Below, one piece after another: positions 23,389 to 64,000 of a stretch of 64,000 bases of DNA. The stretch covers positions 108,276 to 172,275 of the forward strand of contig MCFE01000101.1 of NCBI GenBank assembly GCA_002104905.1, in the 5' to 3' direction. This DNA is from Basidiobolus meristosporus CBS 931.73. Its lineage: Eukaryota; Fungi; Basidiobolomycota. Every line of letters begins with the position of its first letter. The first letter of the stretch is position 1. Under the pieces are notes generated by a model. The model was not told the DNA's origin, made no database searches, and saw only the letters and a program-made list of their open reading frames with translations. The position numbers were made by a program, and so were the translations under genes.

Positions 23389-26518
<3,130 letters not shown>

Positions 26519-28639: not shown

Positions 28640-31600
28640 ATGGGGAATAACTTTTCAAGCACTATACCATCGACTGCTACTGCAGGTATAGATAACTATG
28701 TTGGGGAAATAGGGGATATTCAATACGAAAAGAGGTAATCCTCCTTACATGCTTGGTCCGCATATTCTTTTCCCTGGAACGCATCCATTGTCTTTGGAAA
28801 TGCCCCCAGCGCGAATCTCTGACAATCCCTGTGCTTGTACCCTTCAACTAAGTCTTCCCCTTTCAGCTTAGGGAGTGCTCGGTTTATGAAGACCATCCGG
28901 GGTAGACATAAAGAGGGGCCAGTAGTGGTGAAGATATTTATAAAGCCTTATGTTGGCCTTTCTCTGGATCCGTACATCAATCAACTACGTGGTAAGGCCA
29001 TGTTCCTCTTCACTGGAACTCTTTCATCTTCTGCCGCCACCTTGTCGGCAGGTTCTCTGTTCTACTTCTGGCGACTGATGTTTTGTTCTAGCCGAAAGGG
29101 AGAAGCTGCTCGAGCTTCCCAACGCCTTTCCTTACCAACGTATTTTGGAGACTGAGACTGCGGTCTATCTAATTCGACAATACTTCTTCTCAAACCTTTA
29201 CGACCGCATCAGGTAAGTGTCTTACGAGCCTTCACTTATCCAAAGCCCAGCCTGAACCCTTTTCAGCACCCGACCCTTTTTGGATTTGATCGAGAAAAAG
29301 TGGATTGCGTATCAGTTGCTTCGAACCGTAGCGGACGCACATCGACACGAGGTAGGGTGGTTTGGGTTGGTGAGACCCATCCATGCAAATATTCTAAGCT
29401 TCTATGGCAGATCTTCCACGGTGACATCAAGACGGAGAATGTGTTGGTAACGAGCTGGAACTGGGTGCTACTCTCTGACTATGCGAGTTTCAAGCCAACC
29501 TACCTTCCTGAGGTGAGCCTCTTGCGGATCCACTGGGTTTTCAGCACTCGCTCACACGTATCTTCAGGACAACCCTGCGGATTTTTCTTTCTTTTTCGAC
29601 ACCTCCTCGAGACGTTCTTGCTATCTAGCCCCAGAGCGCTTCTATAACTTCGGGGGCGAAGATGCGATTGCCAACGTAAGTCTTGATATTGATTGGATCT
29701 CTATCGCCATTTTCACTGAACTCTGCCACCTAGCCTGATAATGACCGGGAGTGCGAGGGCTCGCTGACCCCAGCCATGGACGTTTTTGCACTAGGGTAAG
29801 TGGTCGAGCACTCTGGCCATCAGCAGCCCCAACTAAACGCCTTCTTAGATGCGTCATTGCTGAGCTGTTTCTGGAGGGGTCACCAATCTTCTCATTTTCC
29901 CAATTGCTAAGTTACAAGCGAAGCGAGTATGATCCGCTTCCAGAGCTGGAGAGGATAGAGGATCCAGACATACGGGTACTTTGGTTTCGTCTCACCAGAT
30001 TGATCCATGTTGACTAACTGCGGTGCGATTTATCAGAGCCTCATCCAACATATGATCCAACTTGACCCTACGCAGCGATTCACAGCAGAGCGTTATCTTG
30101 CCGAGTGGTAGGGATGCTGTTTCTGATGCGGGGCAGTGCTGGTCGACTAAGCAAGTTTTCTATTCCCTAGGCGAGGCAAGGCATTCCCACAATACTTCTA
30201 TTCCTTTCTACACCAGTACCTTGAAACTGTCCTCGAGTCGCACTCCACAATCATGTCCACCACATCCGATGGCTTTCCCAACGACGCTGACCTACGGATC
30301 GAACGCGTGTACCATGACTTCGATAAAATCGCCTACTTCCTAGGGTTCTATGATGCCCAGGCGAATCAGGAGATGGACCTGGAGCACTTGCCAAGCGGAA
30401 GAGCTAGAGGCAGATACCAAATAAGAAAAGTCAATTCCTTCCTGCCGACAAAGTACAGCATCCCCAATTACGATTCAGCCTCGGTATACTCGGAGAACCT
30501 GGCGTTAGGCCAAGACGACAACGGCGCGGTGATCTTTCTTTCGCTCATCTGCGCGTCCATGCGCAATGCTATGTATCCGTATTCAAAGCTTTATGCGCTG
30601 GACATGCTCTTGGCCATCAGTGAGCACCTGTCAGAGGAAATGAAGTTGGATCGAGTGCTGCCCTATATAGTTAGCTTGCTCGCAGACAACATCAGCCTGG
30701 TCAGAGGTATCGCCATCAGAGCCTTGACCAAACTGCTATCTACCGTAGAGTCCGTCTCCCCAATCAACTCAAAGATCTTCCAGGAATACGTGTTCCCTCA
30801 CCTATCCAAGCTTGTAGACGACAGTGAGGTGTTTGTGCGTGCCACATACGCCGCATGTATACCTTCGCTTGCCGAGACTGCACTTAGGTTTCTGGAGTTA
30901 TCGCAGAGATTCTCCAGTGAAAATGGGCCGCTTGTCGAGGCAGACAGCGAGCTGGAGGACTCCTATGAGCCCACCTATGACCGAGCGCTTCAGGATCTAC
31001 AAATGTTGGTTCAGGAGCAAGTCACCATGCTGTTGATCGATGTAGAGAGCTCTGTCAATCGAGCATTACTGACGGGAATGACCAAACTATGCATATTCTT
31101 TGGCAGACAGAAAACGAACGACTTCCTACTGTCGCATATGATCACCTACCTGAACGAGCCGGACAGCTCGCTTAGGAGCGGGTTCTTTGAGGCAGTTGTG
31201 GGTGTTTGCAAATTCTTGGGAAGCAGATGTCTAGAGGAGTACATCCTGCCGTTGATGATACAAGCGTTGACCGATCCCGAAGAGTATGTGATTGTCAATG
31301 TGTTGAATTCGATCAGCTCTCTCGCCGAGGAGGGGCTTCTTGGGAAAGAGAAAACTCGAGAAATAGTAAGCGCTTTGATGCCGCTGATATACCATCCCAA
31401 CGTCTGGGTCAGGTACGGAGTGATACGAGTCATCGTGTCTGGCAGCAATGCGATGGCTATCACAGACGTGTGGTGCTTCATCTATCCGATTATTCAACCT
31501 TACCTGAAGGCTGATATTCTGGACTTCACTGAGGAAGAGTTGATCGAATCAGTGAGGCCTGCGATCGCTAGGGAGGTTTTTGACGAGGTGCTGCTATGGG

Positions 31601-34103
31601 CGAATGAGTCGTCTGGCTTCCTGAAGCTCAAGAACCTTGCCGTTGACGGGGGCGACTCGGAGGATGGGATAGTTCGATTGTCCATTGGGCTTGACGATAC
31701 CGACAAATCCCACTTCGCCAAGTTGCTAAATCTGAACATAGACATGGAGGACTTGCGCAAACTGGTGATGATGAGAGCGTATCTCTCTAAGCTTTCTCGT
31801 GTGAAGCAAAGTGCTAGGGCAAAGTCGACGGAGAATCTAAGGTCCGCTGCTGCCGACGGAAGCGACACCATACTGCTGAAGAATCTGGGGGTTACGCCGA
31901 GAACTGTCTTTCTTTCTTCTCTGCACCCGGAGACTCCTCCATCCAGACCAGAGATTCTTAAGAGACCACCGCGGCCTCATCTCGTACCTGAGGACACCGC
32001 CCGTAAGCTGTCTATTACCCTGACCAACCGGTCTCACCTCATCCCAGATATCCAACTCGCGAGAACCCCAAGCGAGACCAGTCTAGAATCAGCGTTCAAC
32101 TCGAGCAGAGGCGGCCACGAGTACCATCGGCCATTGAGCTCTGCTCCAAGAAATGTCACTCAGCATCGGAAGCATGATCTAAGCAACCTTTACCTGCGAA
32201 ACCAGTCGGAAACCAGCCTCCATTCAGTGTCGATCTTATCCACCTCGATTAGCCGAAGCAACTCCCATAGACTGTCGCTGCCTTCCTCGCCCGCAAGCAA
32301 GGCGATGCCTGCCACCTCAACCACGATCGACAATGCCATAGCCACATTGGAAGTGCCATCTTCTTCATACGAAGAGAACTCCTCGAAGAGTTTGGCCGTT
32401 GAAGCTCGAGCCAATGCCAAGAAATTGGCGCACGAGAGCGACTTCGAGCCGGTTCCGATTACCCCCACGTCAGTTAGCAGTTACACGTGGAGACAGGACG
32501 GGCCTGGCCGGACATTGAAGCCACTGCTGCAAAAGAAATCGCTGGAGGCATTCCCCCGTCCGCTGAGCGAGTTCGGATCGCCAATACCAAGCAAGAGGCT
32601 AACCAGAAATCGGATGGTCTTCCCGCGGGATTGCTCGGGTAGTCGAGCGACAAGGGCCCTCGAAGGAGTCCTGATCTCCAACCTAACCGAGCACAAAGGC
32701 GGAGTCAACCAGATCTCGTTCTCGCCCGATGATCGCTTCTTTGCCACCTGTAGTGATGATGGAAGCATACGGATATGGGACGCCTCCAGGTTCGAGAAAA
32801 ACGCCACGACGAAGTCAAGGGTCACGTATCAGCAGGGTGGGAAGGTCAAGTGTATGGCGTTCATCGAGAACACTTACAGTCTGGCCGCGGGGTCGGACAA
32901 CGGGTCCATCCATATAATCAAAGTGAATTACCAAAACTACGGGAACACCCCGAAATACGGGAAATGTAGGCTGGTCAGGAAGATCCACTTGAAAGGAGAG
33001 TATCCGCTCCATATTGACCACATGGATTTCGAGCAGTCGTCCCTTTTAATCTACGCCACGAACCTGGGGAAGATATACGGATACGACTTGCGACAGGTGC
33101 AAATAGTCTGGGTGCTGCAGAACCCCATCAACTATGGTAAGTACTGGAAAGAATCCTGGTGCCGTTGGATCGATTGACTGAACATGCCCCTACAGGTGTA
33201 ATCACAGCGATGCTTTGTGACCCCAAACGGACCTGGCTGCTGATCGGTACGAACCGAGGGATTCTGACGCTTTGGGACATGAGGTTCCACATCTTACTGC
33301 GAAGCTGGCAACATCCCAGCAAACTGCCGATCCAGCGGCTGAGGATGTTCATGGGACCGATGGGGGTTTCTCGCACCAGCCGTTATGTGTTGATCGTGGC
33401 GGGGAAAAATGAGGTCTCTTTGTGGGACATTGAGAAGTTGGAGTGCAAGGAGGTGTTTATGGTCCGAAGTATGGACGACAAACGATTGATGGGTCCGATG
33501 TTGGAGTCATTCCAGGTGTGTTGAATGTGATGTGTCTGCCATGGATCGCCCCTGAACTAACCCACATACCCGCCAGGCTCAGGAGATTCCAAGTGAGCGC
33601 AATTTCCTCGTCGATCCCGACAATTCTCCCGGTTTCCCAACGCACCACGAGACGTCCATCACGAACGTCATATCTCCGTTCAACTGCTCGTGCATTCTTA
33701 CAGCTGGCGCGGGGAAGATCCGCTTTTGGGACATGGAGCACCCGGAAAGCTCGTATATCATCAACGGGCTGCCCGGCGAAAGCCGTCCCAATTTCAGGTA
33801 TTTGCATCTGATTCTTTTTGGCCCACGTCGCGCATGACTAACGAGCTCCCTTGCAGTAAACTGATCCATGATGGGATCACCCTTCACATCGAAACCCCTG
33901 CTCGGACCCGAAAGTCCAGCACGAGTAGCTCGCACTCCCGGACCCGCGTGGCCTCCTTTGGAAACCCGCTAGTCGCTGAAGAGGAAGGGGCCGGTCGAGT
34001 CTCCATGCATATTGACAATATTGCCGACCTGAAAATTGGCACCTATCCATACTTGATGTTGATAAGTGCAGATAGAGATGGTGTAATAAAAGTGTATCGT
34101 TGA
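28640..34103 (+). CDS. VPS15: Vps15 (PI3K regulatory subunit), copy A; contains one 2,966-bp exon (30171-33136)
   Basis: [23 protein letters not shown] (N-myristoylation Gly2), [35 protein letters not shown] repeats (SHMITYLN), WD40 ([10 protein letters not shown]), ending [11 protein letters not shown]. Confidence 0.95.
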
Positions 34104-34158
34104 AAGAGTGCCGTGCAATGTTTGGAGGAGTAATTTATTCAATAATATTCAAGTAAAC

Positions 34159-34188
34159 GGGGGAGGGGAGGAGGAGGAGGAGGAGGAG
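34159..34188. repeat. (GGA)n microsatellite in the 93-bp spacer between the two VPS15 stop codons
   Basis: GGGGGAGGGGAGGAGGAGGAGGAGGAGGAG. Confidence 0.9.
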
Positions 34189-34196
34189 ATGATGGC

Positions 34197-37100
34197 TTAG
34201 CGGAATACCTTGATCACCCCTTCCCTGTCGGCGCTGACAATGATGGTGTACGGGACCTCCACGAGCTGGATGTCGTTGATGCAGTCGGTGTGGTTGTTGA
34301 CCAGCATCTGCTGGAGTTGGGACACCGGGTTGCCTATCCGTGGCGCTTTGGACTTGCTGGGGGTACGAGGCGGTGTTTCGATGTGGAAAGTGATCCCGTT
34401 ATGGATCAGTTTACTGTAGTGGGCAGACGTTGGTACGGTCAGAGTGGGGATGTGGTTTGGCTGAGGTCAAGATGGATTACCTGAAGTTTGGCTTGGGCTC
34501 ACCAACATGCAGCCCGCTGACTATGTACGAGCCCTCCGGGTGTTCGATGTCCCAATACCTAATCTTCCCCACCCCGGCGGTCAAGATGTAGTTGGTATTT
34601 GCTGGGGAGATCATCGATCGAATGGAGTTCTCCTGGAATGCCGAGAACCCGTACTGGCCAGGGTTGAGCACATTCTTTAGAAACGATTCCTTACTTGGGA
34701 TATCCTGAGCCTGGGGGGATCGTCGAGAGTTGATCAGTGCATTCTTCAGAGATGCTTGCATAGCGTAGATTACCTTCAATACATCCGACCCAATCTTACT
34801 CGACCTTCTGTCGTCCACCGCGCGTACCATGAACACCTCTTTGCATTCGACCTTCTCAATGTCCCACAGGGAGACCTCGTTGTTCCCTGCAGCGACAAGG
34901 ACATGCCGGCCTCTGCTTGAGGGTCCCATGTATATCACCAGCCGATTGATGGAGGTTTTGCTTGGATGAATCCAAGACTTCAATGAGATGTGAAATCGTA
35001 GATCCCACAAAGTCAAGATCCCCCGATTCGTGCCGACCAATATCCAAGCCCGGTGATGGTCGATCACAAACGAAGTGATGACTCCTGGAATGCAAAGGTG
35101 AGTTCGGGTGTCCTACACGGATCCACATGAAATGGAAATACCGAAGTTGGTTGGGTTTCGGAGGACCCAGACGACCTGAGTTTTGCGCAGATCGAATCCG
35201 TAGATGTTGCCCTTCGTCGTGGCGTACACGAGCAGCGATTCTTGTTCTATTCAGCATGGGTTGGTGGTGAGCTTGGTTTGTTGCAAACGCTTTCGTAAAC
35301 GGAGTAAATCATACCAGTGTTGAAGTGCTCGATTGCCACCACGTGCTCGTCCTTCAATACTATCTTCCTCACCGTCTGGCATTTCCCGTATTTCGGAGCA
35401 GTGTTATTACCTTGGTAATCAACCCTGTTGATGGATTGGTGAGTCAGTACGTTGTGGTGTGCCTCCTATTTGGTGCGGATTTCACCTGAATATATGAATG
35501 GTTCCGTCATCGGATGCAGAGGCGATACTGTAGGTATTCTCAATAAAAGTCATGCACTTTATCTTCCCCTCTGGAGGTGCAATGTCAGTGGTGTCGCTAC
35601 AATGCATGAGCACTTTACCTACCTTGCAGGCTGTATGTGATCCTAGGCTTTGTAGTAGGGTTTTTCTCTAGTCGTAAGCAGTCCCATATCTTCACTGTTC
35701 CATCATCGCTGCATGAGGCAAAGAAGTTGTGGTCGGGTGCGACGCACACCTGATTCACTGACGCTTTGTGGGCTGTGAGGTTAGCAATAAGAGTCCCTGA
35801 GGGGGTGTTAATGCATGGGATCCAGTGGAAGCTCTGGAGGGACATCTACCTTCCAGTTTGCAGTCAAAGATGGTGGAGTTCTCCGCATTCTTGTTGAAGG
35901 CGCGTCGATTCCGCGCGATGATCGCCATTGATAGATGCGGCCCGAGTTCTAATCAGACGGTTACTTGCCATGCTCAACCAACTCTAGAAAATTGCTCTCT
36001 ACCATTCAGCGGCCTTGGAAACGCCTCTAGCGATTTTTTCTCCAGCAGCGGCTTGAGTGTCCGGTCCTTCGGATCTAGTAATCCATCAGATGTCGGGTTT
36101 TTTGAACACTCCTGGTCGTTGCTTGCGCTTACCTTTGGCCCAACCGATCACTGTGCCAGGTGTATTCGGTGCACCTTGACTTTTCACAGAATCCCGATCC
36201 ACTTCGCGCTCTAGTTTGTGCTCATCGAGTACGTGTTCGGAGCTCGGGATGTCAAGCGTAGCTGTCACTACAGTCGCATGGGTACCCGTCGCAGCGGAGC
36301 TCTTGCTGGCTACTGGTGAGGAAGCAACCGATGGTAGATGCGAATTACTTCTTGATATCGGTGTGGACAGGATGGGGATAGAGTTCACACTCGTCTCCGA
36401 GTAATTGCTGAGTTGAAACCCACTGAAATGCCTTTTCTGCGCCTTCGGATGGAGGCTGAGAGACGATGGGCTGCCATCGTGGGTTTCGGTGTTCTTGATT
36501 GGATTATCGCTGGCGGCTTTGGCTAAAGGCACATCGGTGGAAAGGTATGGTCTTTGGGACGAAATTGAAGAACGCCTAAATAATGGACACGACAATGAAT
36601 GTGAAGACCCGTCCGCTCCCCTTATCTATTGGATGTAATTACCTACTCCCACCAGCCTACACGTAATGCGCGTTCAGCGAGTGTAATTAAATCATTGCTA
36701 AAGATTGCGTACATACCTCGGACGTCCCGTTTCTCTTGGTACTCTTCTTATTCGGGTCAGCTCGCTGTTGCTCCTCTTCTGGATATGGCGATGTTAAGAA
36801 CACCGTTCTAGGAGTGATACCTAGATTCTTGAGCATTATGGAGCCGTTCTGCATAATTGAAGGGTCAGGTATAATGGGTTTTGATGAGGGTTTGACTAGG
36901 TCGATGTACCTCAATCTCAGTCCTGTTCTTGAGGTTGGCGGAGACTTTGACTCGTAGATTCTGCTTGGCTCGGGATAACTTCAGCAAGTACTCTCGCATG
37001 AACAGGAGTTTCTCTAGATCCTCCGCTGTCATTCCAAGCTGTTGAAGCTTGGACAGGTTGGATCGGTCGCTGCGAGCGAATCTACATGTCAGCTCGAATA

Positions 37101-40100
37101 TCTGCCACAATAAACAAACAAGCAACGTACACATCCGAGAACTTCACGGGGATGGGCTGGATTGACGCGGAGTCGCTACTCTTTAACTGATTCAGTAGAA
37201 TATCGTCGAGGATGAGAAACGTCGGCGACTGGCTGGCCCATTGCAGCACTTGCTCAAATATGATTCTGTTGATCTAAAGCGGTATGTGAATCGAGGGATG
37301 CTCGTGAATCTGGGCCGATTTCTCTTACCCGAGGTTTGGCAGCCTCCAGCAACTCAGGCTCGGTGAGGTTGATGATGTCGGCCTTGAGAAAAGGGCGAAT
37401 GGTGGGGTAAATGAAGCACCAGACATCTGGAACGGTCAGCACCTTGCCACAAGACACAATAAAGGATATAGCCCCTTTCAACGCAAGTTGCTTGGGTTAG
37501 TGGGTTGGTTGCCGTGCCACCGGACGAAGTAGAGCATACCGTAGGAAATCCAGGAATTGGGGTGGCAGATCAATGGGGCCACCACGCCGACAAGCTCCCA
37601 AACCTTGATTTTGTTGAAGAGGCCCAACCCTGCCAGCGATGCAAGCGAGTTCAACACCTTCTCCACCACATATTCCTCCGGATCTGCAGGTCCGCTGTTA
37701 GCCTTCATGGAGTTTGCCAATCAAGAGCCAGTTTGGACTTACCTATCAAGGACTGTACCATCAGTGGCAGGATGTATTCTTCCAGACTCTTTCCACCAAC
37801 GAAGGTGCCGACGCCAACAATCGTCTCGAAAAAGGCGCCCCGGAGCATGCCGTCTTGGTCGTTAAGATATGTGATCATGTGTGACAGCAGGAAATCGTTG
37901 GCTTTCTGTCGGCCAAAGAACACGCACAGTCGAGTGATCCCGGACAAAAGGGCTCGTTTGATCGAGCTTTCCTGGTCAATCAACAGTATGGTGACCTGCT
38001 CTTGGATATACAGCTGAAGGTCAACCAACGCTACGTCATACGTGGCCTAGGAACAGTCATGAGTGGGAGGCGCTCTCATTGTCATTCGACGAATACATAC
38101 CTCGTAAGGCGAGCTTCCATCCATATCCTTGTCGGTATCGTTATTGGCCCCTGTTTTGAAGCTCTGGAGGAAAATTTAGTCATGATCCACCGTCTCCTCA
38201 CACTGCTGAACCGAAGCGAACCTGAGAAAGCTCCAGAAAACGCAAGGCAGTCTCTGACAATGAGGCAATGCAAGCGGCGTAGGTTGTGCGAGTAAAAATC
38301 TCAGGGTCCGTGGCAAATCGACGAAGGTGCGGAAAAATGAATTCAGGGAAAATGTTGGAATTGATCGGGGCGATCGTTTCTACGGTGGACAGCTTTGGAG
38401 CGACATGAGTGATTTAGAAATGCAAATCCATCGTTGCAGCTCATCGAGTCTTTTACCAGTTCCGTCATTGCCTTCACAGCACTCCCTCTGACCAGGCTCA
38501 CTCGATCGCTCAGCAGACTGACAATATATGGCAGGAGTCGATCCAGCTTCATGTCGTCGCTTAAATGCTCGCTTATAGCAAGTAGCATGTCGAGCGCGTA
38601 CAGTTTTGAGGAGGGATACACAGCATTGCGGATAGACGAACATATCAGCGACAGGAAGATCACGGCCCCTTCATCGTCTGCACTCACGGCAACCAGTTAG
38701 CTGTCGAAACTACATCAGCATACAGACTGACATGGTACCTGACTCCAGCTTCGTAACCTCCGAAAGCGTTGACGAAGAGTCGTAATGCGGTATATTATAT
38801 TTGACCGGAAGGAAATTCTACATGAAAACAGCTCAGCGTCCATCTCATTCACCCATAAATCCCGATCAACGAATACATTGACTTTCCCTGTTCCTAGATT
38901 GTTGATCGGGTTAGCCCAGGCAATGGACATGCCACGCAAATGACATCTACTCACGATTCGATTTCTTCTTGTCCGAATCGTAGAAGCCTAGGAAGAAGGC
39001 GATCTTGTCGAACTCGTTGTAGAGCTTTTCGATGCGCACATCTGCATCATTCGGAGATCCATCGGCAGTAGAGGGCAAGAAATCAACGTGTGTATCGATG
39101 ACCGAGGCCAGGTATTGATGAAGGAAAGTGGAAAAGTAAGAAGGGAACGACAAGTCCCGCCTGGAAGGCACATCTTGTTAGCAGTGGCCCTCTCTTGAGC
39201 CTGTGGGGAACACATTACCAATCAGACAAATACCGCTCGGCCGAATATCTTTCTTTAGGGTCCAGCTGAATCATGTGCTTGATCATGTCCTAATGATGTA
39301 CAAGTCGTTAGCCTCTCGGCCTACGCTACGTAAGTCGGCAAAATTACTCTGATGGCTGAATCTTCGATCTTCTCCAGCTCCGAAGTAGGATCATATTCAT
39401 TTCGCTTGTAGCTGAGAAGCTGAGAAAAAGAGAAGATTGGGGTGCCTTCCAAGAATAGCTCGGCGATCACACATCTATAGCGAGAGGATTTAGCATGCAA
39501 GGTGCAGGGCTGAACTGGCACTTGACACGAACCCTAATGAGAATATGTCCATGGCTTCGGTTAATTTCGTTTCTTTCCTGGAGTTTTCAAACTACAATAC
39601 GATGTATGTTAATTTGCTCATCGATGCACCCTGCCGGAATGCGTACTTACGCTTGTGTTTTCCTCCTCATGGCCGGAGTTGTAAAACCTCTCAGGTGCCA
39701 AGTAGCAGCAACGCCTCGAGGAAGTATCAAAGAAAAAGGAGAAGTCTGCCGGGTTGTCCTGAAAGAAATTTCAAGTCTCAGTGCCTGTTTGCCTCGGGGC
39801 AATGTCGAACACTAACCTCCGGTAAATATGTTGGTTTGAAGCTGGAGAAGTCAGACAGTAGAACCCAGTTCCAACTGGTGACGAGAACATTCTCTGCCTT
39901 GAGATCTCCGTGATATATCTTGGAAATTAGAAAGGCCATTAGAGGCTACTTGAGATTTTCTCGCCCAGCTGTGGGCATATATATACAAACCTGGTTTGCA
40001 TGCGCATCGGCAACGGTGCGAAGTAGTTGGAAGGTAATCCACTTCTTTTCTATCAGATCCAAGAATGGGCGCGTGCTTTGAGATTAAGGAAGTTGAGAAC

Positions 40101-40640
40101 AGTCCAAATGTCATTCCATGAGCTTGAAATTTACCTAATTCTATCGTATAAATTGGTGAAAATATATTGTCGAATGAGATATACAGCAGTCTCGGTTTCG
40201 AAGATTCTTTGGTACGGCAGCGCATTCGGAATATCTAGCAGACCGTCACGCTCCACTGCAAATAAGGGTTACAATAGGCCTCAAACAACCAAACAAGGCA
40301 GCAAACTTTGAAGGATTACCGTTAAATTGGTTGATGTATGGCTTCAACGAGAGCTCCGCGTAAGGTTTTATAAAGATTTTCACTACAACTGAACCTTCTT
40401 TGTGTTTACACCGAATGGTTTTCATAAACCTTGCACTTCCTAAACTAATATTAAAAACCTAAGTTCCCTTATTCCAGCGACGATGTGCTTCCACTGAGCT
40501 TATAACGAACAAGTGTTTGAGCTGGGAGAGGGAGAACCTTTGTACCTTTTCTCATACTGAATATCCCTAAGCTCACCTACATAGCTGTCAATACCTGCTG
40601 TGGCGGTTGAAGGTATTGTGCTGGAAAAGTTGTTACCCAT
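34197..40640 (-). CDS. VPS15: Vps15, copy B; highly intron-rich
   Basis: [86 protein letters not shown], ending [13 protein letters not shown]; more than 25 canonical introns. Confidence 0.93.
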
Positions 40641-41103: not shown

Positions 41104-44100
41104 TTATACTAATATAATATTATACCACTCCTCTTCGTTTCCGCCGGCTGCTCCGTGCTTTGACGCTCTTCTTCTCTTTTTCACAAATCCACTATCAACC
41201 ATGAGATTCTCCACCTCAGCTGGTGAGGCTATTGAGGGGTTCTTGACTTTGTGTGAGCGACACCATTGCAGGTAGGCATCATAGAGCACTGCTGAGGACA
41301 CATACGAGTATGGCTTCACTTCTATGCAGTCATCTACGAACTCATTGAAGCTCTGCTCTTGTCCGCTGGACTGACTTTCGTTGGGAGTTTCTCCCGAGAA
41401 CTCGCTTTCACCATCAGGAATGGTCGGGGGAGAGAGATAATTGCTAGATCTAGCATGTGCCATATTGTAGTTGGGGTTGGTATTCGGGTTGGGACTAGGT
41501 AGGTCCACAACGCTTCTGCTGGCTCTTGGAGACGTGCTGTTGGAAACATTTGCCATTGGCGAGTACATGTGTCCGTTTGAACCAGGGGGCATGGACAACC
41601 GCAAGTTGCCGACAGAAGAGCTAGCAGCACGAATCTGTTGTGGGTGGAATGAGCTATTTGCATAAGCTCCGCTTACTTGTGGATCCGCGTACGATTGTCT
41701 GGCGTGGAGAGGTGGGTGTTGCGGCGACTGGAGGGGCATAGTATCAGGCATCATTTGCGGCGGCATTGACATCCTCATGTTGCGCTGAGAAGGAATTCCG
41801 CTTGGGTATCCAGCGGGAATCGGTTTGGCGTGGGGGTTAAGGGCACCATAGTGAGTATGGCGATTGCTAGGTGGTGCTTGACTTCTAGAATGCGTGGGGT
41901 ACATCGAATGACGGTTGAGGGATTTCCCCAGAGACTGGTTTTCATTCTCTACATGTAGACGAGGATACAACGACGTTGGTCGGTTCATCTGGGGAGGCTT
42001 GGCCATTGATGACATGCGCTTCGATTGTGGCATTTGGTGCATCGACAGTCGGCTGTCGTAGTTATGGCCACCCATCGAGGCCCCGTAAGCGCTCTGGCTA
42101 CGAAGATCGCGATATGCAGAGCTATGGCGATACTGCCGACGAGCCATCTCATCTCTGTAGAGGATCTGTTGGCGCTGTTCGTGCATCATTCGCTCTTTCT
42201 CTCTCTCAATGGCTCTTCCACGCTGTCTTTCAAGTTCAGCCTGGGCACTGCCGGAGTTGGCATTTGTGTAACGTGGCGCAGCCTTGAATTGCTGACGAGC
42301 AGCAATTGCTCCAACCAAGCCAGCCGCTGCCGAGTTGATGTGCTTCTTCTTATTAGGGATTCCTTGGATTAATGGACCGTACCTTGGCTGATCCTTCTGC
42401 GCCTGTTTAGCGGCCTCGTATTGAGCCAACAGGCCAGGGGGTCTAGGGGGATATATCGGACGTTCTTCATGGTAGCTGTCTCCATCAAAGCCGTATTCTT
42501 GGGAATTTACGGCCATCATTCGTTGACGCTCAATTTGCTCTCGTCTTCTGTCGACGGACAGCTGTGGGCTCGAGTAATTCATTTGTTCCTCTTCATAGGG
42601 GTATGAGTCGTCATCCTCTGGGATGGTGCCTGAGAACTGATGAGAGGACTCGACGCCCCTGTGCATGTCTGACTGGCTGTGGGATCTACTACGGTAGCCA
42701 GCCTTATGTAAGGCCTCCTCTGAGAGTGAGCTGGATGAGGTGGATGCCGAATATCTGATTCTTGGAGGATAGGGTGCATAGCCACTAGGCGATATGCCTC
42801 TAGATTCCCTATGCTCAGAGCTCACCACAGAAACACTATCGCTGTTGTTGGAGCTGGCAATACGAGGCGAATGTGGCACTGGGGATGGATTTTGAGAATC
42901 GGAATGGACGGAGTTGGCATCATCTTCGGGGATGCTTAGTGTAGGTCTAGGTGGAGCGACTACTTCATCCTGCGCCTTCGGTTTGCCTTCAGGAGCAGAG
43001 CCGAGTTGATTGGCCTCGGTGGCAATTGAGTTGTTACCGTCCTCGGATTCCGAATTGGAATCAACGATCTCTTCCTCATCCTCCTCGGAATCACTAGGCA
43101 GAATGCCGTGCGACTTCTTGCGATATTTGTCCGTGTTTCTGGGTTTGATTCCAAGCTCCTCTTTCAATACCACCTCAGATTCGCTCTGCACCTCGGTCAT
43201 TTCGTTGCTTGGCACTTGTTGCTCGCCCTCGAAGTTGGGCTCGTCGGAATGAGATATAGAATCGGTCTCTGGTAGGGACTGGGATTCCAGTGATCTTGCG
43301 CGATCGGAGCTCTCTACACTGCCATCCTCGATATACATATCATCCAGCTGGTCAGTAAGCTGCTCTTCAATCTGATACTCCCGCTGTAGTTGATAATAGA
43401 ACGCATCGTTGAATTGGACCTTGGCATAAGCCAGACTGGCGTTTTTGATAGAGATGTGATGCACATCCTCAAGTTGCAGAAACAGGGCTTGATCATCGGA
43501 TGGGGCAGGAGGGATGAACAGTTGCTCTGGTCTGCCTAGCAGTCTATAGGCATCGAATGAGGAGATAAGCCACTCCGCAAGCTCTTTCTGCGTTGCCGTC
43601 TTCACAAGCAGGAACCCGCAATCCTTCTGATTCTTGCTTGGTTGCATGAAATGCATCAACCCCTCTACTTTGAAAGTGGTCAACTGCTCGACTTCATGAG
43701 GGCTATTAGGGTATACGGCGTAGGCTTGGGTGACCTTTGATATGATGATAGCTGGCTGGGATTTCTTGTTTTCGTACAGAAGGATCTGCGCAAAGTCCGG
43801 TGTGGTACCGGGGGAGTTGTCCAGAATCGCCCAGTATTTCTTCCATTGGGCTGAGCCAGGGTATTTTATCTCGATGTCCCCTTCCATCGAGGTATGGTAG
43901 ATGTAAAACATATCGGCATGCTCAGGGCGAGTTAGCAAGACATATGTAAACATCTCGTGAAGTTTGGAAAACTCATAACACGACAGGTATATCGCGCATA
44001 CCCAGTCATTCACATCTTTCTCGCTCTCCGCCTGGATGTAAAACCGGTTGGCGCCCGAAGTGTTCAACGAGAACACGTTGTCCTTTTTCTTCTTTAGTGT

Positions 44101-57653: not shown

Positions 57654-58697
57654 CTACTGTTGTAGCTTTGATACAAGAGTGTGTAGCTGAGGGGAATTTG
57701 TAGGTAAGTTAATAAGAAGTGATGATAGCTCTTCAGTGCTCAAGACACTGTCCAGTGGGAAGGGGGGTAGCAAGAGAGGTAAGATTGACTTGTGAACAAC
57801 ATTTATGAGGGGAATGTGATAAGGATTGATATTCATCATAAAGGGAGTGTGCTGCTGCAGATATTGCTGCCAAAGGTCTGTCAAGTACTTCAGGTAGGCC
57901 AGCTTGGGTTTTTCTGACTGCAGAATATAGTGAGCAAACGTCTTGACTTCAGGATCTCCAAGTATAGTTCTCCAGCAGGAGCCAGGTGTTGTGTGGTGAG
58001 TTCTCTTCCAGGCCTTAAGCAGTGGGTTGTTGCAGTTGTGAAGTCTGAGGTATAATCTGGTTCTAAGGTAGAGAAGTCTGATCTTATAGGGCATAAGCCC
58101 AAAAGCACCAAGAATAGCATGTCTGTAGGGGCATTTAGGCAAATGAGGCACCAGGGAGGTAATGCACCATACTGCAAGCTTGTCAAGCTTAGTGCAGTCT
58201 CTAGAAGTAAGAGAGAGAAGTGGTAAGCCAAATTCCAGGACAGGGAAGACAAATTGCTTGAGTAGAAGGAGGCAGCTGGGAGCTGAAGTTGTAGGAGGGG
58301 TAACAGCCAGTAGCTTGTGAAGTGCCTGTCTTGCCAGGATAATTCTCTTCTTCAGGTGTGCTCCAGAGTCTAGTCCAGTAGGAAGGAAAGGAAAGCCAAG
58401 ATATGTAGCAGAAACCTGAGCAGGTAGAGTGGAGTTCACCAAGTTGATTGGAGAGCCCAAAGGTACTGTCTTTGCAATGGAAATCTGGAGATTATTCTTC
58501 TGCAGATACTGGTGGATGGTCTGGGAGTCTTGCTGTACATTGGAGGAGGATATTCTGATGTCATCAGCAAAGAGAGTAACCAGGCAGTCAGCTGAGAGTC
58601 TTGGGAAATCATTCAGGAAGATGGCAAACAGTATAGGACCAAGCACAGAGCCTTGAACCACTCCATTAGAAACTGAGAACACAGCTGATTGCTCACT
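57654..58697 (-). mobile_element. Non-LTR (LINE-type) reverse transcriptase, 5' part cut by the copia insertion
   Basis: GVVQGSVLGPILFAIFLND, LFADDI, KT, TYLG, FVFPVLEFG; the open frame abuts the LTR exactly at 58697/58698. The track's MEIQIFTT N-terminus comes from LTR sequence. Confidence 0.9.
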
Positions 58698-61607
58698 TGT
58701 TGTAAAAATTTGTATTTCCACCTAAATATTCACCTAACTTAGTCACTTAGATCATTACCTTCAAATCCTAGAAAATACTGACCAAATTCCTTGTCGGGAT
58801 TTACTTAGAATATTTTCACCAAAATACCAGGTACCCAGAACATGAAAATTCTCAAAGTTGTCCAAACAGCCCCAAACTTTGCACACATGTTCTTGGGACC
58901 TTCCTTAACCTATTCTACGTGTTTGTAATGCCAAGACCAGATAAAAGTATAAATACCACTTTTACATTCAATAAATCATTAAGTGAAAACCACATAATCT
59001 ACTTGTTCTCCCAATCACTTCCAATATCTCCAAGACTCTTACAACAGGTTATGAGCCCCGAGCTGTCACTCTCTGCAATGTCTACTACTGCTATTACTGG
59101 AATTTTTCCCTCTGCTGAAAAGTTGGATGGATCTAACTACCAAGTGTGGAAGGTGAAGATGAAGATGCTGCAACAAGAAAGAGGCCTTTGGGATATTGTC
59201 ATGGGAGAAGAATGCCCTCCTAAAAACATGGGAGAGGAAGCCTTAAAGTACCAGAAGAAAGAACAAAGTGCCTTTAACTGCATTTGCCTTAATGTCAAGG
59301 ACAAATTGCTAATTCAATGCTCAAGAGCAAAAACGGCAAAGAATGCCTGGAAAGCATTAGAAGACACCTACCAGTCATGTTCAGCTGCCAAGAAAATGTA
59401 TCTGAGAAGAAAATTCTTTACAACAAAGATGCTGCCAGGAGAAGAAATGAAAAATCTAATTAACAGAATTACCCTGCTGGTAGATGAGATGGAATCTGTG
59501 GGCGTACCAACTACTGATGAGGATGTGATAGTTACCATCCTGAATAGCCTGACAGACGAGTTTCAGGGCCTTGTATCAGCCCTAGAGTCCAGAACTGAAG
59601 ATTTGACCTTAAATTACGTATATGGAAGGCTCCTGGATGAAGAATTAAGAAAATCAAGCGCCAATAAGAAGGAAGAAGAAAATGCTTTAATAAGCAATGA
59701 TAACCAGCAAAGGAGGTACCCAAGACCCTACAAAGGCAACAGCAACCTATTTTGCAACTACTGCAAAAGGAAAGGACACACATCAGACCGGTGTTTCAAA
59801 AAGAGAGATTATCAGCAAAAGAAGCCTGAATATGGAAATGCTGCAACAACTGAAGATAGACTATTCATATCTGCACTAAATATGACCACAAACAAGGATT
59901 CTCAGACGTGGTATATTGACTCTGGAGCTTCTCAACACTTTACACACCAAAAAGAACTTTTTACCCAATATCAAGAAATTCCAATTAAGAAGGTTTTCAT
60001 GGGTGACAATAGAACACTTGATGCAGTGGGAGAAGGAACTATCCAAGTATACCTTAGAAGCAGTGAAGGAAGCCATACACTGACCTTTCAAGAAGTACTC
60101 TATGTACCAGAAATAGCCAAGAACCTACTCTCTGTAAGCAAGGCCACAGCAGAAGGACTCAGTTTCAGTTTTGACAATTCTGGATGCAGGATCACTGATC
60201 AAAATGGTGCCCATATTGCTTCGGGCATCAGAGATCAGAACCTATACAAGTTGACTTATATTCCATCATATCTGGAAGCCAATATAAGTAACTTAAATGA
60301 AGAAACACCAATGCTTTGGCACAGGAGATTTGGACACATCAATTTTGATTATTTGCGTAAAATGATCAAAGATCAGCTAATTTCTGGAGTGAAAATTGAT
60401 CCCCCAGCTAATTTGGAGCACTGTGAAGCCTGCATATATGGGAAACAAGCCAGACAACTGTTCAAGAGCTCTGGGTTAATCAAAACTAAGAAAAAATTAG
60501 ATCTAATTCACTCAGATCTGTGTGGACCTATGCAAAATTTATCCTTAGGCGGGATGAAGTATTTAATCACTTTTATTGATGATTAAACAAGATACACATG
60601 GGTCTACTACATGGAGAGAAAGGAAGAAGCTCTGTCTAAGCTCAGGGAGTTTAAAGCCATGGTGGAGAGAGAAACTGGTGAAAAAATCAAGAAAATACGC
60701 TCTGACAATGGTGGAGAATATAACTCAAAACTCTTCATCCACTTCTGCAAAGTTCATGGGATAAAGCAAGAGACTACTGTACCATACTCCCCACAGCAAA
60801 ATGGAGTAGCAGAACAAGCTAACAGATCAATAATTGATATGGCAAGATCTATGATCCATGATCAAAAATTATCCTATGATTTTTGGGCGGAATCAGTTGC
60901 CATTGCTGTATATCTTAAAAATAGGAGTTATAACAGAATACTTTATGATTCTACTCCATTTGAAGCATGGTATGGATACAGACCAAGTGCAGAACATCTA
61001 AGAATATTTGGGTGTACAGCATATGCCAAAAAACTGGCCGGAAATCAGTCAAAATTTGAGCCAAAAAGTGTAAAATGCATATTTTTGGGCTACTGCAATG
61101 AGAGTAAGGCATACAGACTGTACAATACCAAAGCAAAGAAGCTGATCAAGTCCAGGGATGTGTTGTTTGATGAAAATTCAAAATTTTCACAAAAAATGAC
61201 ATCAGATGATGACGAAAATTTGATCTCAAGTCCACCAATTGTCAGGATTGAATCAGAGCAAAACAATGAAAATTTTTTCACTCCAGAGGACTCTACAACC
61301 GTGGTTCAGCCAGAATCAGTGCCCAGGAATATCCCAGAAGTGATCATTCCAGTATCAAATGCCCGGAGATCAAATTGGACAAGAAATAGCCCAAATTACT
61401 ATATTAATGAGGGTACAAACTTAGCCTATGCCTATTCAGTCCATATTGATGAACCCCAAACTGTAAAAGAGGCCCTAAATAGCCCTCAGACAAAGTTTTG
61501 GAGATCTGCAATGACTGAGGAATATCAGGCCCTGATGGAAAATCAAACTTGGACTTAGTCAAATTACCAATCAACCAAAAATCAATTGGATGCAGATGGG
61601 TCTTCAA
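58698..61607 (+). mobile_element. Ty1/copia element A: 5' LTR 58698-59046, gag-PR-IN and start of RT; defective and interrupted
   Basis: 349-bp LTR with TGTTGTAA...TTACAACA ends. Gag LDGSNYQVWK, zinc knuckle CNYCKRKGHTSDRC, protease WYIDSGASQH, GAG-pre-integrase LWHRRFGH, integrase IHSDLCGP. In-frame TAA at 60584-86 and a 1-nt deletion at about 61553. Predicted TSD is TCACT. Confidence 0.95.
59047..59058 (+). promoter_or_regulatory. Primer-binding site of the copia/Ty5 (half initiator-tRNA-Met) type
   Basis: GGTTATGAGCCC directly follows the LTR end ...TTACAACA. Confidence 0.85.
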
Positions 61608-64000
61608 TGTTGTAAGAGTCTTGGAGATATTGGAAGTGATTGGGAGGACAAGTAGATTATGTGGTTTTCACTTAATGATTTATTGAATGTAAAAGTAGTA
61701 TTTATACTTTTACATGGTCTTGGCATTACAAACACGTAGAATAGGTTAAGGAAGGTCCCAAGAACATGTGTGCAAAGTTTGGGGCTGTTTGGACAACTTT
61801 GAGAATTTTCATGTTCTGGGTACCTGGTATTTTGGTGAAAATATTCTAAGTAAATCCCGACAAGGAATTTGGTCAGTATTCTCTAGGATTTGAAGGTGAT
61901 GATCTAAGTGACTAAGTTAGGTGAATATTTAGGTGGAAATACGAATTTTTACAACACTCCCACTCAGCTAAATGTTCATACTGACTAGTCCTAATTTTGA
62001 CCTAAGATATTCAAACTTGTCTCTAGCTAATGGTTTGGTAAATATGTCTGCAATCATTTCATCTGTAGGACAGTAAACTAAGCTAACTAAGTTATTCTCT
62101 ATAGCTTCACGTATGAAATGATGTCTAATATCTATGTGCTTGGTTCTAGCATGAAAAGTTGGATTTCTACCTAATTGTATACATCCTTGATTATCTTGAA
62201 ATAAAGTAATAGGCGTTTTTTGACATAGGCCTAAATCTGTAAAGAGCTTTCTTAACCACATTGCTTCTTTTGTAGCTTCACAGGCTGCCATATACTCTGC
62301 CTCTGTAGTAGAAAGTGCTACGGTTGGTTGCTTTCTTGAATTCCATGAAATGGCTCCTTTACAGTAAAGAAAGGTGTATCCTGTGGTGGATCTTCTGTCT
62401 TCTAAATTTCGTCCCCAATCAGCATCAGAGTATCCCACAAGATCCTGTTCTGAATCCTTATAAGTGTATCTTAAGCAGATATCAGCAGTTCCTTTTAGGT
62501 ATCTAAAAATCCGCTTAACTGCTGCAATATGATCAGATCCATAATTCTGATTATGTTGGCTGACAACTCCCACTGAATATGAGATATCTGGACGTGTTCC
62601 AAGCATGATATACATCAGACTGCCGACCATAGATTGATAAGGAAAGTCAGGGCTTTCAGATGGCACCAAGCTCTCTTGATTTGGTTGAGTTTTGACCAAG
62701 TTAAGGTTTGTCTCCATTGGGGTAGCTGCCGGTTTACAGTCTTCCATTTTGTACTTCTTTAGTATATCTTGAATATACTTGGATTGGCTTAGGGTAATAG
62801 TCTGGGTACTTCTGTCTATGGAGAACTTAATCCCTAAGTAGTAACTAAGTTCTCCTAGATCGGACATCTTGAACTCCTTAGATAGGCTGGATTTAGTCTC
62901 TTCCAATGTTTCTAGGTTATTGGCGGCTATAATAAGATCATCCACATATAGAGCTAATAGAACTGGATTTGCTCTATCTGGCTTATAGTATATACTATAG
63001 TCAGCATTACTCCTTTTGAAACTCAAAGATTCCAAATAAGAATCTATCTTGCAATTCCAGGCTCTTGGTGATTGTTTGAGACCATATAGTGACTTTTTAA
63101 GCTTGCAGACCAAATGGGGGTTATCTTGGTCAACAAACCCATCAGGCTGGTCCATATACACGTCCTCATCAAGTTCTCCATTCAAAAATGCAGTTTTTAC
63201 ATCCATTTGATGAATAAAAAACTTATATTTGGCCGCAATAGCCAATATTAATCTGATGGAATTAAACTTGGCTACCGGTGCAAAGGTCTCAGTATAGTCA
63301 AGTCCTTTTGTTTGAGAGTATCCTTTGGCTACAAGTCTTGCTTTGTATCTTTCAATTGTACCATCAGCCTTGTATTTTGTCTTGAAGACCCATCTGCATC
63401 CAATTGATTTTCGGTTGATTGGTAATTTGACTAAGTCCCAAGTTTGATTTTCCATCAGTGCCTGATATTCCTCAGTCATTGCAGATCTCCAAAACTTTGT
63501 CTGAGGACTATTTAGGGCCTCTTTTACAGTCTGGGGTTCATCAACATGGACTGAATAGGCATAGGCTAAGTTTGTACCCTCATTGATATAGTAATTTGGG
63601 CTATTTCTTGTCCGATTGGATCTCCGGGCATTTGATACTGGAATGATCACTTCTGGGATATTCCTGGGCACTGATTCTGGCTGAACCACGGTTGTAGAGT
63701 CCTCTGGAGTGAAAAAATTTTCATTGTTTTGCTCTGATTCAATCCTGACAATTGGTGGACTTGAGATCAAATTTTTGTCATCATCTGATGTCATTTTTTG
63801 TGAAAATTTTGAATTTTCATCAAACAACACATCCCTGGACTTGATCAGCTTCTTTGCTTTGGTATTGTAGAGTCTGTATGCCTTACTCTCATTGCAGTAG
63901 CCCAAAAATATGCATTTTACACTTTTTGGCTCAAATTTTGACTGATTTCCGGCCAGTTTTTTGGCATATGCTGTACACCCAAATATTCTTAGATGTTCTG
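61608..64000 (-). mobile_element. Ty1/copia element B of the same family, inserted in opposite orientation into A: 3' LTR 61608-61956, PPT 61957-61967, pol 61968 to beyond 64000
   Basis: LTR about 98% identical to A's (at least 7 differences counted); PPT (CT)GAGTGGGAG; uninterrupted RT (ERYKARLVAKG, HQMDVKTAFLNG, LYVDDL) and RNase H (GYSDADW, KHIDIRHHFIRE). Predicted TSD is TTCAA. Confidence 0.95.

What the first reader, a model, noticed from the sequence alone, without database searches (positions are those of the whole stretch)
30171..33136. Block loss of about 17 consecutive introns in one VPS15 copy
Seen: copy A has a single 2,966-bp exon. The homologous stretch of copy B (39160 to 35142, 4,019 bp) has about 17 introns by my count, and the ~1,050-bp excess fits introns of about 60 nt. 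Introns on both sides of the block (after ..DIR/AIR and ..EW/DW; at NYG/NFG, before AQEIP/AQDIP and at NFR) are in the same positions in both copies. Known: recombination with reverse-transcribed mRNA removes adjacent introns together, usually with a 3' bias. Inference: one internal cDNA gene-conversion event after duplication, with an internal control next door and RT-encoding elements nearby.
Basis: partly seen in the sequence, partly recalled or inferred. Interest (0 to 1): 0.75.

Follow-up and report, generated by a model that had tools for sequence, protein, structure and literature searches.

The report
Block intron loss in VPS15 paralog
One of two neighbouring copies of the VPS15 gene in the fungus Basidiobolus meristosporus has cleanly lost a run of about 19 neighbouring introns that its sister copy keeps; this is a large, well-controlled example of a known process in which a spliced-RNA copy overwrites part of a gene.

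Summary
The window is Basidiobolus meristosporus. Copy A (+ strand) has one 2,966-nt exon at 30171-33136. The homologous 4,019 nt of copy B (39160-35142, - strand) holds 19 GT-AG introns of 52-68 nt in the annotated model.

All 12 introns of A, nine 5' and three 3' of the block, sit at the same codon and phase as introns of B.

Polarity is now settled for much of the block. In metagenomic VPS15 loci from Agaricomycetes and Ascomycota, 8 of the 19 block introns are found at exactly B's position and phase, and 2 more probably are. These introns are therefore ancestral and A lost them.

A protein tree places the duplication inside Basidiobolus, before the meristosporus/ranarum split. The lost introns form a single run (P about 9e-8 if losses were independent). 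Most sites show no nearby indel. B's introns share no sequence, so they are not introners.

The best reading is recombination of A with a spliced cDNA over an internal tract of 2.6-3.0 kb. This is a new member of a known kind.

The parts
28640..34103 (+). VPS15 copy A, ATG to stop: 13 exons and 12 introns. The database model P0001 stops early at 33521.
   Evidence: Exact spliced mapping of P0001. The last two exons were found by tblastn with B's C-terminus and by reading the splice sites. Spliced alignment of P0004 covers 28640-34100. Pfam finds a VPS15-like helical domain, HEAT and WD40.
30171..33136 (+). The intron-free 2,966-nt exon of copy A (the finding)
   Evidence: continuous ORF, colinear with B and with the outgroups
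30108..30170 (+). Last retained intron 5' of the block in A (phase 2). It is shared with B intron 39218-39161 and with the outgroups.
33137..33195 (+). First retained intron 3' of the block in A (phase 1, after ..NYG). It is shared with B intron 35141-35085.
33516..33576 (+). A intron before AQEIP (phase 0). It is missing from model P0001 and shared with B intron 34773-34711.
33798..33856 (+). A intron at NF|S (phase 2), shared with B intron 34480-34414 and with the Agaricales locus L069
30171..30397 (+). Interval that must hold the 5' end of the inferred cDNA conversion tract. It runs from the retained intron to the first lost intron site.
   Evidence: Inference
33030..33136 (+). Interval that must hold the 3' end of the inferred conversion tract
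   Evidence: Inference
34197..40640 (-). VPS15 copy B (P0004): 32 exons and 31 introns, tail-to-tail with A, with 93 nt between the two stop codons
35142..39160 (-). Stretch of B homologous to A's long exon: 4,019 nt with 19 model introns
38894..38954 (-). B block intron after aa 359, phase 1. It borders the 17-nt micro-exon and has no outgroup witness.
38818..38876 (-). B block intron after aa 365, phase 0. The Agaricales locus L069 has an intron at the same position (51 nt, in frame and open), so it is probably ancestral.
38678..38738 (-). B block intron after aa 391, phase 1. L069 and L072 have a phase-1 intron one residue away, so it is probably ancestral.
38393..38456 (-). B block intron after aa 465, phase 0. 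It is ancestral: the same site is occupied in L069, L068, L057, L047, L072, L074 and several Ascomycota loci.
38164..38221 (-). B block intron after aa 522, phase 0; no outgroup witness
38047..38100 (-). B block intron after aa 543, phase 0; ancestral (L069, L068)
37684..37742 (-). B block intron after aa 644, phase 1; ancestral (L069, L068, L047)
37475..37539 (-). B block intron after aa 692, phase 1; ancestral (L069, L068, L057)
37274..37328 (-). B block intron after aa 741, phase 0; ancestral (L069, L068, L057, L047, L058)
37070..37130 (-). B block intron after aa 788, phase 2; ancestral (L069, L068, L074)
36849..36909 (-). B block intron after aa 842, phase 0; no outgroup witness. The outgroups have an intron at 825, phase 2, instead.
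36657..36716 (-). B block intron after aa 886, phase 0. It borders the 14-nt micro-exon. The alternative is a single intron at 36712-36616.
36576..36642 (-). B block intron after aa 890, phase 2; the second intron at the 14-nt micro-exon
36075..36132 (-). B block intron after aa 1038, phase 1; ancestral (L069 and the ascomycete locus L057)
35949..36002 (-). B block intron after aa 1062, phase 1; no outgroup witness
35797..35849 (-). B block intron after aa 1095, phase 1; no outgroup witness
35571..35622 (-). B block intron after aa 1153, phase 1; no outgroup witness
35425..35485 (-). B block intron after aa 1181, phase 2; no outgroup witness
35247..35314 (-). B block intron after aa 1218, phase 1; ancestral (L069, L057)
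57657..58721 (-). Context only: ORF with an RVT_1 (LINE-type) reverse transcriptase domain
61971..63905 (-). Context only: copia-type RVT_2 reverse transcriptase ORF. The gag and integrase ORFs lie at 58919-61555 on the + strand.

Best explanation
An inverted (tail-to-tail) DNA duplication of an intron-dense VPS15 gene took place in the Basidiobolus lineage. Afterwards, copy A recombined with a reverse-transcribed, spliced VPS15 cDNA. The exchange was an internal gene-conversion or double-crossover tract. Its 5' end lay in 30171-30397 and its 3' end in 33030-33136, giving a length of about 2.6-3.0 kb. It replaced genomic sequence with intron-free sequence and erased 18-19 neighbouring introns at once. 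The nine introns upstream and the three downstream were left untouched. Shown: the exon/intron structures, the identity of the flanking introns, loss rather than gain for 8-10 block introns, the contiguity of the losses, the exactness at most sites, and the lineage-specific duplication. Inferred: the cDNA intermediate, the single event, and that the nine block introns without an outgroup witness were also present at the time of duplication.
For: Structures.
Polarity: the Agaricales locus L069 has 11 introns in the block region. Nine coincide exactly with B's introns in codon and phase, and one lies a residue away (hypergeometric P about 1e-19). The Russulales locus L068 shares 6 of its 7 mapped introns. 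The ascomycete locus L057 shares all 5 of its block introns (P about 7e-12).
Tree: the clades (Bmer_A, Bran_A) and (Bmer_B, Bran_B) are sisters with 100% support, and the Dikarya branch outside them.
Contiguity: 19 of 31 introns lost as one run has P = 9.2e-8 under independent loss.
Exactness: 13 of the 19 sites have no indel within 11 aa or more.
No introner signal: the introns share no sequence and have no other copies in the window.
No B-only introns in the flanks: 0 in about 1.64 kb of flank CDS against 9 unwitnessed in 2.89 kb of block. If those nine were uniformly placed gains after the duplication, P would be about 0.02 (my arithmetic).
RT genes exist in the window.
The same pattern and mechanism are documented in Cryptococcus, mammals and rice duplicates (PMC2395259, PMC3652778, PMC1779517).
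Against: No cDNA intermediate can be seen in sequence. The loss is internal and not 3'-biased, since three 3' introns survive; simple poly(A)-primed, 5'-truncated cDNA does not predict this. Five lost sites (B aa 359, 365, 1038, 1095, 1153) lie 1-4 aa from small indels, so exactness there cannot be shown at 54% block identity. Nine block introns lack an outgroup witness. Synonymous sites between A and B are near saturation, so the age of the tract cannot be read from divergence.
Confidence: 0.8

Rival explanations
1. Several successive events removed the block in A piecewise, either two or more shorter cDNA conversion tracts or a series of individual exact deletions. These happen to add up to one continuous run.
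For: Nothing in one genome separates one tract from two or three abutting tracts. Small indels sit next to 5 of the 19 sites. An unchecked first-reader note (s1-239845) describes stepwise intron loss in V-ATPase subunit a paralogs of this genome.
Against: Fully independent single losses are rejected by the contiguity of the run (P about 9e-8). No intron inside the block survives to mark a boundary between tracts.
Confidence: 0.15
2. Part of the difference is gain in B. On this reading, the nine block introns without an outgroup witness (B aa 359, 522, 842, 886, 890, 1062, 1095, 1153, 1181) were inserted into B after the duplication, and A lost only about 10.
For: These nine positions are empty in the Dikarya loci that cover them. 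The outgroups carry an intron at 825, phase 2, where B has one at 842, phase 0.
Against: B has no private intron in either flank, which gives P about 0.02 for nine uniformly placed gains. B's introns share no sequence, so a burst of introners is excluded. Dikarya are known for heavy intron loss (PMC8476143), so absence there is weak evidence.
Confidence: 0.08
3. Copy A is a retrocopy made from a partly spliced pre-mRNA in which only the middle introns had been removed. On this reading the duplication and the intron loss are one event.
For: It would explain in a single step why the intron-free block exists only in the duplicate.
Against: A lies tail-to-tail directly beside B, 93 nt between stop codons, as in a DNA-level inverted duplication. 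It keeps 12 introns on both sides. An A-type orthologue is conserved in B. ranarum on the same contig as the B type. Whether A carries a poly(A) tract or target-site duplications was not checked. A transcript with 12 terminal introns unspliced and 19 internal ones spliced is an unlikely template.
Confidence: 0.02

Closest known systems
mRNA-mediated (reverse-transcriptase model) loss of adjacent introns in Cryptococcus (Sharpton et al. 2008, PMC2395259; Stajich & Dietrich 2006, cited there)
   Same: Several consecutive introns are removed together in an intron-dense fungal gene. The losses are often internal, with the 3'-terminal introns kept. Independent loss is rejected by resampling.
   Different: Here the comparison is between two paralogs in one genome rather than orthologues of close species. 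The event is much older, with synonymous sites near saturation. The block of 18-19 introns looks larger than those cases as far as I recall them; I could not read Stajich & Dietrich 2006.
'Extraordinarily large exons' as evidence for mRNA-mediated intron loss (Niu, Hou & Li 2005, Mol Biol Evol 22:1475; seen only as a citation)
   Same: A very long exon sits inside an otherwise intron-dense gene and is read as the footprint of cDNA recombination.
   Different: I did not read that paper. Here the inference is backed by a paralog control and by outgroup intron maps.
Intron loss in segmentally duplicated genes of rice (Lin et al. 2006, PMC1779517)
   Same: After duplication one copy loses introns, sometimes several consecutive ones or all of them. 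No 3' bias was seen overall.
   Different: That study is on a plant, with whole-genome statistics. The largest case quoted there is seven introns.
[quoted passage not shown]
   Same: It supplies the mechanistic step assumed here: cDNA made by retroelement RT replaces genomic sequence by homologous recombination.
   Different: That is a laboratory demonstration in yeast. Nothing of the kind has been shown in Basidiobolus.

Membership tests
RT/cDNA-mediated intron loss | The introns were present ancestrally, so the difference is loss and not gain | tested here: met
   8 firm and 2 probable of the 19 block introns are at B's exact codon and phase in Agaricomycetes and/or Ascomycota loci. P is about 1e-19 and 7e-12. 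The outgroups branch outside the duplication. Nine introns remain unwitnessed.
RT/cDNA-mediated intron loss | Adjacent introns are lost together | tested here: met
   The 19 (or 18) lost introns form one run between 9 and 3 retained ones. P = 9.2e-8 (1.5e-7 for 18) under independent loss.
RT/cDNA-mediated intron loss | Removal is exact, with no loss or gain of exon bases at the junctions | tested here: inconclusive
   13 of the 19 sites have no indel within 11 aa or more, and one more has none within 4 aa. Five sites lie 1-4 aa from 1-8-aa indels, which cannot be attributed at 54% block identity.
RT/cDNA-mediated intron loss | 3' bias of lost introns (poly(A)-primed, 5'-truncated cDNA) | tested here: not met
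   Three introns 3' of the block are retained. Internal loss is nevertheless a documented variant of the model (PMC2395259).
RT/cDNA-mediated intron loss | A source of reverse transcriptase in the genome | tested here: met
   RVT_1 and RVT_2 ORFs lie at 57.7-63.9 kb of the window. This is circumstantial only.
RT/cDNA-mediated intron loss | Direct evidence of a cDNA intermediate | not testable with these tools
   Sequence alone cannot show it.
VPS15 / PIK3R4 protein kinase family (both copies) | N-terminal kinase domain, VPS15-like helical/HEAT domain and C-terminal WD40 propeller | tested here: met
   Pfam PF22956, HEAT and WD40 on A's long exon. The precomputed Pfam lists for P0001 and P0004 hold kinase, HEAT and WD40 families. 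Both copies keep the MGNNFSS N-terminus and the HGD[IL]K motif.
Processed retrogene | No introns at all, a poly(A) tract and target-site duplications | tested here: not met
   A keeps 12 introns and lies tail-to-tail beside B. Only the first criterion was tested; a poly(A) tract and target-site duplications were not looked for.
Introner-type burst of intron gain (in B) | New introns share sequence with each other or with other copies | tested here: not met
   All-against-all blastn of the 43 introns gives only 9-13-nt chance matches. There are no further copies in the window.

The most novel reading that the evidence does not exclude
The block loss was a single internal cDNA conversion of at least 2.6 kb that erased 19 introns, which would be among the largest single-event losses documented in fungi. 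It may also be one instance of a recurrent, paralog-targeted 'retro-erasure' in the RT-rich Basidiobolus genome. Two observations point that way: other long exons in this window (a 775-aa 3' exon in the alanyl-tRNA synthetase gene and a 1,111-aa ORF in the PH-domain gene) and an unchecked note of stepwise intron loss in V-ATPase subunit a paralogs. If so, duplicated genes in this genome could serve as a natural time series for measuring rates and tract lengths of cDNA-mediated intron loss.
Probability: 0.2. Interest if true: 0.55.

Novelty: new member of a known kind. Interest (0 to 1): 0.4.

Why it matters
Loss of neighbouring introns in one stroke is the main prediction of the reverse-transcriptase model of intron loss, and large, cleanly polarised cases are few. 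This locus has a built-in control, the sister copy 93 nt away. It also has an outgroup-verified direction, and both tract ends are bounded to 227 and 107 nt. It shows that an internal tract of about 2.6-3 kb can be converted while intron-dense flanks stay intact. That supports recombination-based rather than 3'-truncation explanations. It also corrects two database gene models: P0001 lacks its last two exons, and P0004 has a mis-spliced first intron. It does not reveal a new mechanism.

Tried and rejected
1. The look-up of encoding contigs, tried for the B. ranarum contig that carries P0002 and P0003, was closed. The A-type gene structure in the sister species, and so the date of the event and any intermediates, could not be examined.

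2. The P0002 protein was inspected for footprints of block introns. It is colinear with A and only shows read-through of the intron after NYG, which says nothing about the block.

3. Introner or repeat origin of B's introns was rejected.

4. Later conversion of A's block by B-derived cDNA: identity at 4-fold sites is 0.29-0.40 in the flanks and the block, against 0.27 expected, so the sites are near saturation and show no contrast. This test is uninformative.

5. The 1,111-aa ORF beside copy B, checked as a possible 'RT element nearby', is a PH-domain gene.

6. Most of the 80 metagenome loci are intron-poor Ascomycota and add only the 66, 106 and 465 introns. Many 'introns' called in the poorly conserved linker are multiples of 3 without stops, and I treated them as alignment artefacts.

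7. L072's 891(2) match and L058's 647(1) and 69(1) matches were not counted because their sequence context is weak.

8. Stajich & Dietrich 2006 is not held in the library.

A's two unannotated 3' exons were handled exon by exon, by reference. In scripts, B's annotated exons were concatenated only to index codons against P0004.
Full report
**Identity of the locus.** The long ORF at 30169-33174 translates to a VPS15-like helical/HEAT region followed by WD40 repeats. A word search gives a 100% match to P0001, an 'ARM repeat-containing protein' of Basidiobolus meristosporus CBS 931.73, on a 172-kb contig. The second copy in the window is P0004. Basidiobolus ranarum has both types on one 61-kb contig: P0002 (81% identical to A) and P0003 (B type).

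**Structures.**
- Exact spliced mapping of P0001 gives an exon at 30171-33136, 2,966 nt. Nine introns precede it and the intron 33137-33195 follows it.
- The database model ends early. tblastn with B's C-terminus, together with the splice sites, shows two more introns (33516-33576 and 33798-33856) and a stop at 34101-34103.
- Exact mapping of P0004 gives 31 introns on the minus strand. The stretch 39160-35142 holds 19 of them, each 52-68 nt and 1,131 nt in total. All have GT-AG ends, and each would break the frame or introduce a stop if kept.
- Two of the 19 flank micro-exons of 17 and 14 nt. For the second micro-exon, a homology-guided alignment with P0003 prefers one 97-nt intron, so the count is 18 or 19. 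The four-way protein alignment supports the micro-exon residues.
- I wrote a protein-to-genome aligner with intron states. It recovers 31 of 31 introns with P0004, 30 with P0003 and 28 with the Rhizophagus protein.
- Run on copy A with P0004, the aligner places all 12 introns of A at B's codon and phase and finds none in the block.
- The first intron also matches once B's N-terminal model is corrected to 40545-40445.

**Loss or gain.** I scanned metagenome contigs with an alignment instead, which returned 80 VPS15 loci.
- Most loci are intron-poor Ascomycota that keep only the introns at B positions 66, 106 and sometimes 465.
- A single-exon segment tree places L069 with Lyophyllum (Agaricales), L068 with Artomyces (Russulales) and L057 within the Pezizomycotina. 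L047, L058 and L074 form a sister group to the ascomycete representatives. L072 is unplaced.
- I mapped each locus with its nearest database protein and projected the result onto B. L069 then has block-region introns at B positions 365(0), 392(1), 465(0), 543(0), 644(1), 692(1), 741(0), 788(2), 1038(1) and 1218(1), plus one at 825(2) that B lacks.
- L068 has 465, 543, 644, 692, 741 and 788. L057 has 465, 692, 741, 1038 and 1218. L072 has 392 and 465. Direct alignment with P0004 gave the same sites with conserved flanking residues.
- Eight positions are firm: exact in position, and interrupted by a stop or frameshift in at least one outgroup. Two are probable. Position 365 is seen once, as an in-frame open 51-nt intron. 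Position 391/392 is one residue off, in two loci.
- Chance coincidence is excluded: hypergeometric P is about 1e-19 for L069 and 7e-12 for L057.

**Timing of the duplication.** In a tree of 26 full-length VPS15 proteins, the clades (Bmer_A, Bran_A) and (Bmer_B, Bran_B) are sisters with 100% support, inside a Basidiobolus-only clade. The A stem is longer than the B stem, 0.37 against 0.24. The duplication is therefore lineage-specific and older than the split of the two species. The Dikarya loci are true outgroups. Introns shared by B and Dikarya were present in the gene that duplicated, so A lost them.

**Nature of the loss.**
- The lost introns form one run. Under independent loss, the chance of 19 of 31 being contiguous is 9.2e-8.
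- Thirteen of the 19 sites have no indel within 11 aa. Five lie 1-4 aa from small indels, which cannot be interpreted at this divergence.
- B's introns have no similarity to one another and no other copies in the window, so a burst of introners is excluded.
- B has no private intron in about 1.64 kb of flank CDS. This argues against the nine unwitnessed block introns being gains after the duplication (P about 0.02, my arithmetic).
- Identity at 4-fold sites between A and B is close to the random expectation in the flanks and the block alike. The event cannot be dated from divergence, and a later B-derived conversion can be neither shown nor excluded.

**Mechanism.** The pattern matches the reverse-transcriptase model, in which a spliced cDNA recombines with the gene. 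The tract ends are bounded to 30171-30397 and 33030-33136.
- The loss is internal and not 3'-biased.
- Internal loss of adjacent introns is documented in Cryptococcus, where recombination-based and self-priming variants were proposed (PMC2395259).
- Adjacent loss is a standard prediction of the model (PMC3652778).
- Loss in one member of a duplicate pair is known from rice (PMC1779517).
- RT genes exist in the window, 24 kb and more away. That only shows the genome has a source of the enzyme. The ORF next to B is a PH-domain gene, not an RT.

**What stays open.** It is not resolved whether there was one event or a few abutting ones. It is not known whether B. ranarum's A-type gene has the same gap. 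The status of nine block introns is also open. P0002 only shows that the intron after NYG exists in B. ranarum, because the model reads through it.

**Search limits.** Exons absent from the database models were handled by reference, exon by exon.

**Verdict.** This is a large and clean new example of a known process, not a new mechanism.

Noticed in passing
window 28640-33521 and 33516-34103: The database model P0001 for copy A is truncated. It reads into the intron at 33516 and misses the last two exons (33577-33797 and 33857-34103), which encode the end of the WD40 propeller.
   Followed up: yes
window 40445-40640 (-): The database model P0004 for copy B mis-splices the first intron, using 40580-40459. 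Homology to A, to B. ranarum and to Agaricales supports 40545-40445 (phase 2), which restores the conserved [10 protein letters not shown] segment.
   Followed up: partly
window 34104-34196: Only 93 nt separate the stop codons of the two convergent VPS15 genes, so their 3' UTRs probably overlap as antisense transcripts.
   Followed up: no
window 24191-26518 (+): A 775-aa uninterrupted ORF covers an alanyl-tRNA synthetase from Pfam profile position 159 to the C-terminal DHHA1 domain. This implies short 5' exons followed by one 2.3-kb 3' exon, the classic 3'-biased intron-poor pattern.
   Followed up: no
window 41104-44439 (-): A 1,111-aa single ORF encoding a protein with PH and fungal PH-like domains lies directly upstream of copy B. 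It is another very long exon in an otherwise intron-dense neighbourhood.
   Followed up: partly
L047, L058, L074 (metagenome contigs): Three related soil or plant-associated VPS15 loci group as sister to the ascomycete representatives. Their introns are very short (35-43 nt), and they keep the ancestral introns at B positions 465, 644, 741 and 788. They may be Taphrinomycotina-like.
   Followed up: partly
L069, L068, L047, L058 (B-coordinate 825, phase 2): The outgroup VPS15 genes share an intron at B position 825(2) that neither Basidiobolus copy has. B has an intron at 842(0) nearby instead. This is either a loss plus a gain or an intron shift.
   Followed up: no
P0002 (B. ranarum A-type model): The B. 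ranarum model ends by reading through the intron after ..NYG (KFHSLRSF..). It is therefore also truncated at the 3' end.
   Followed up: partly
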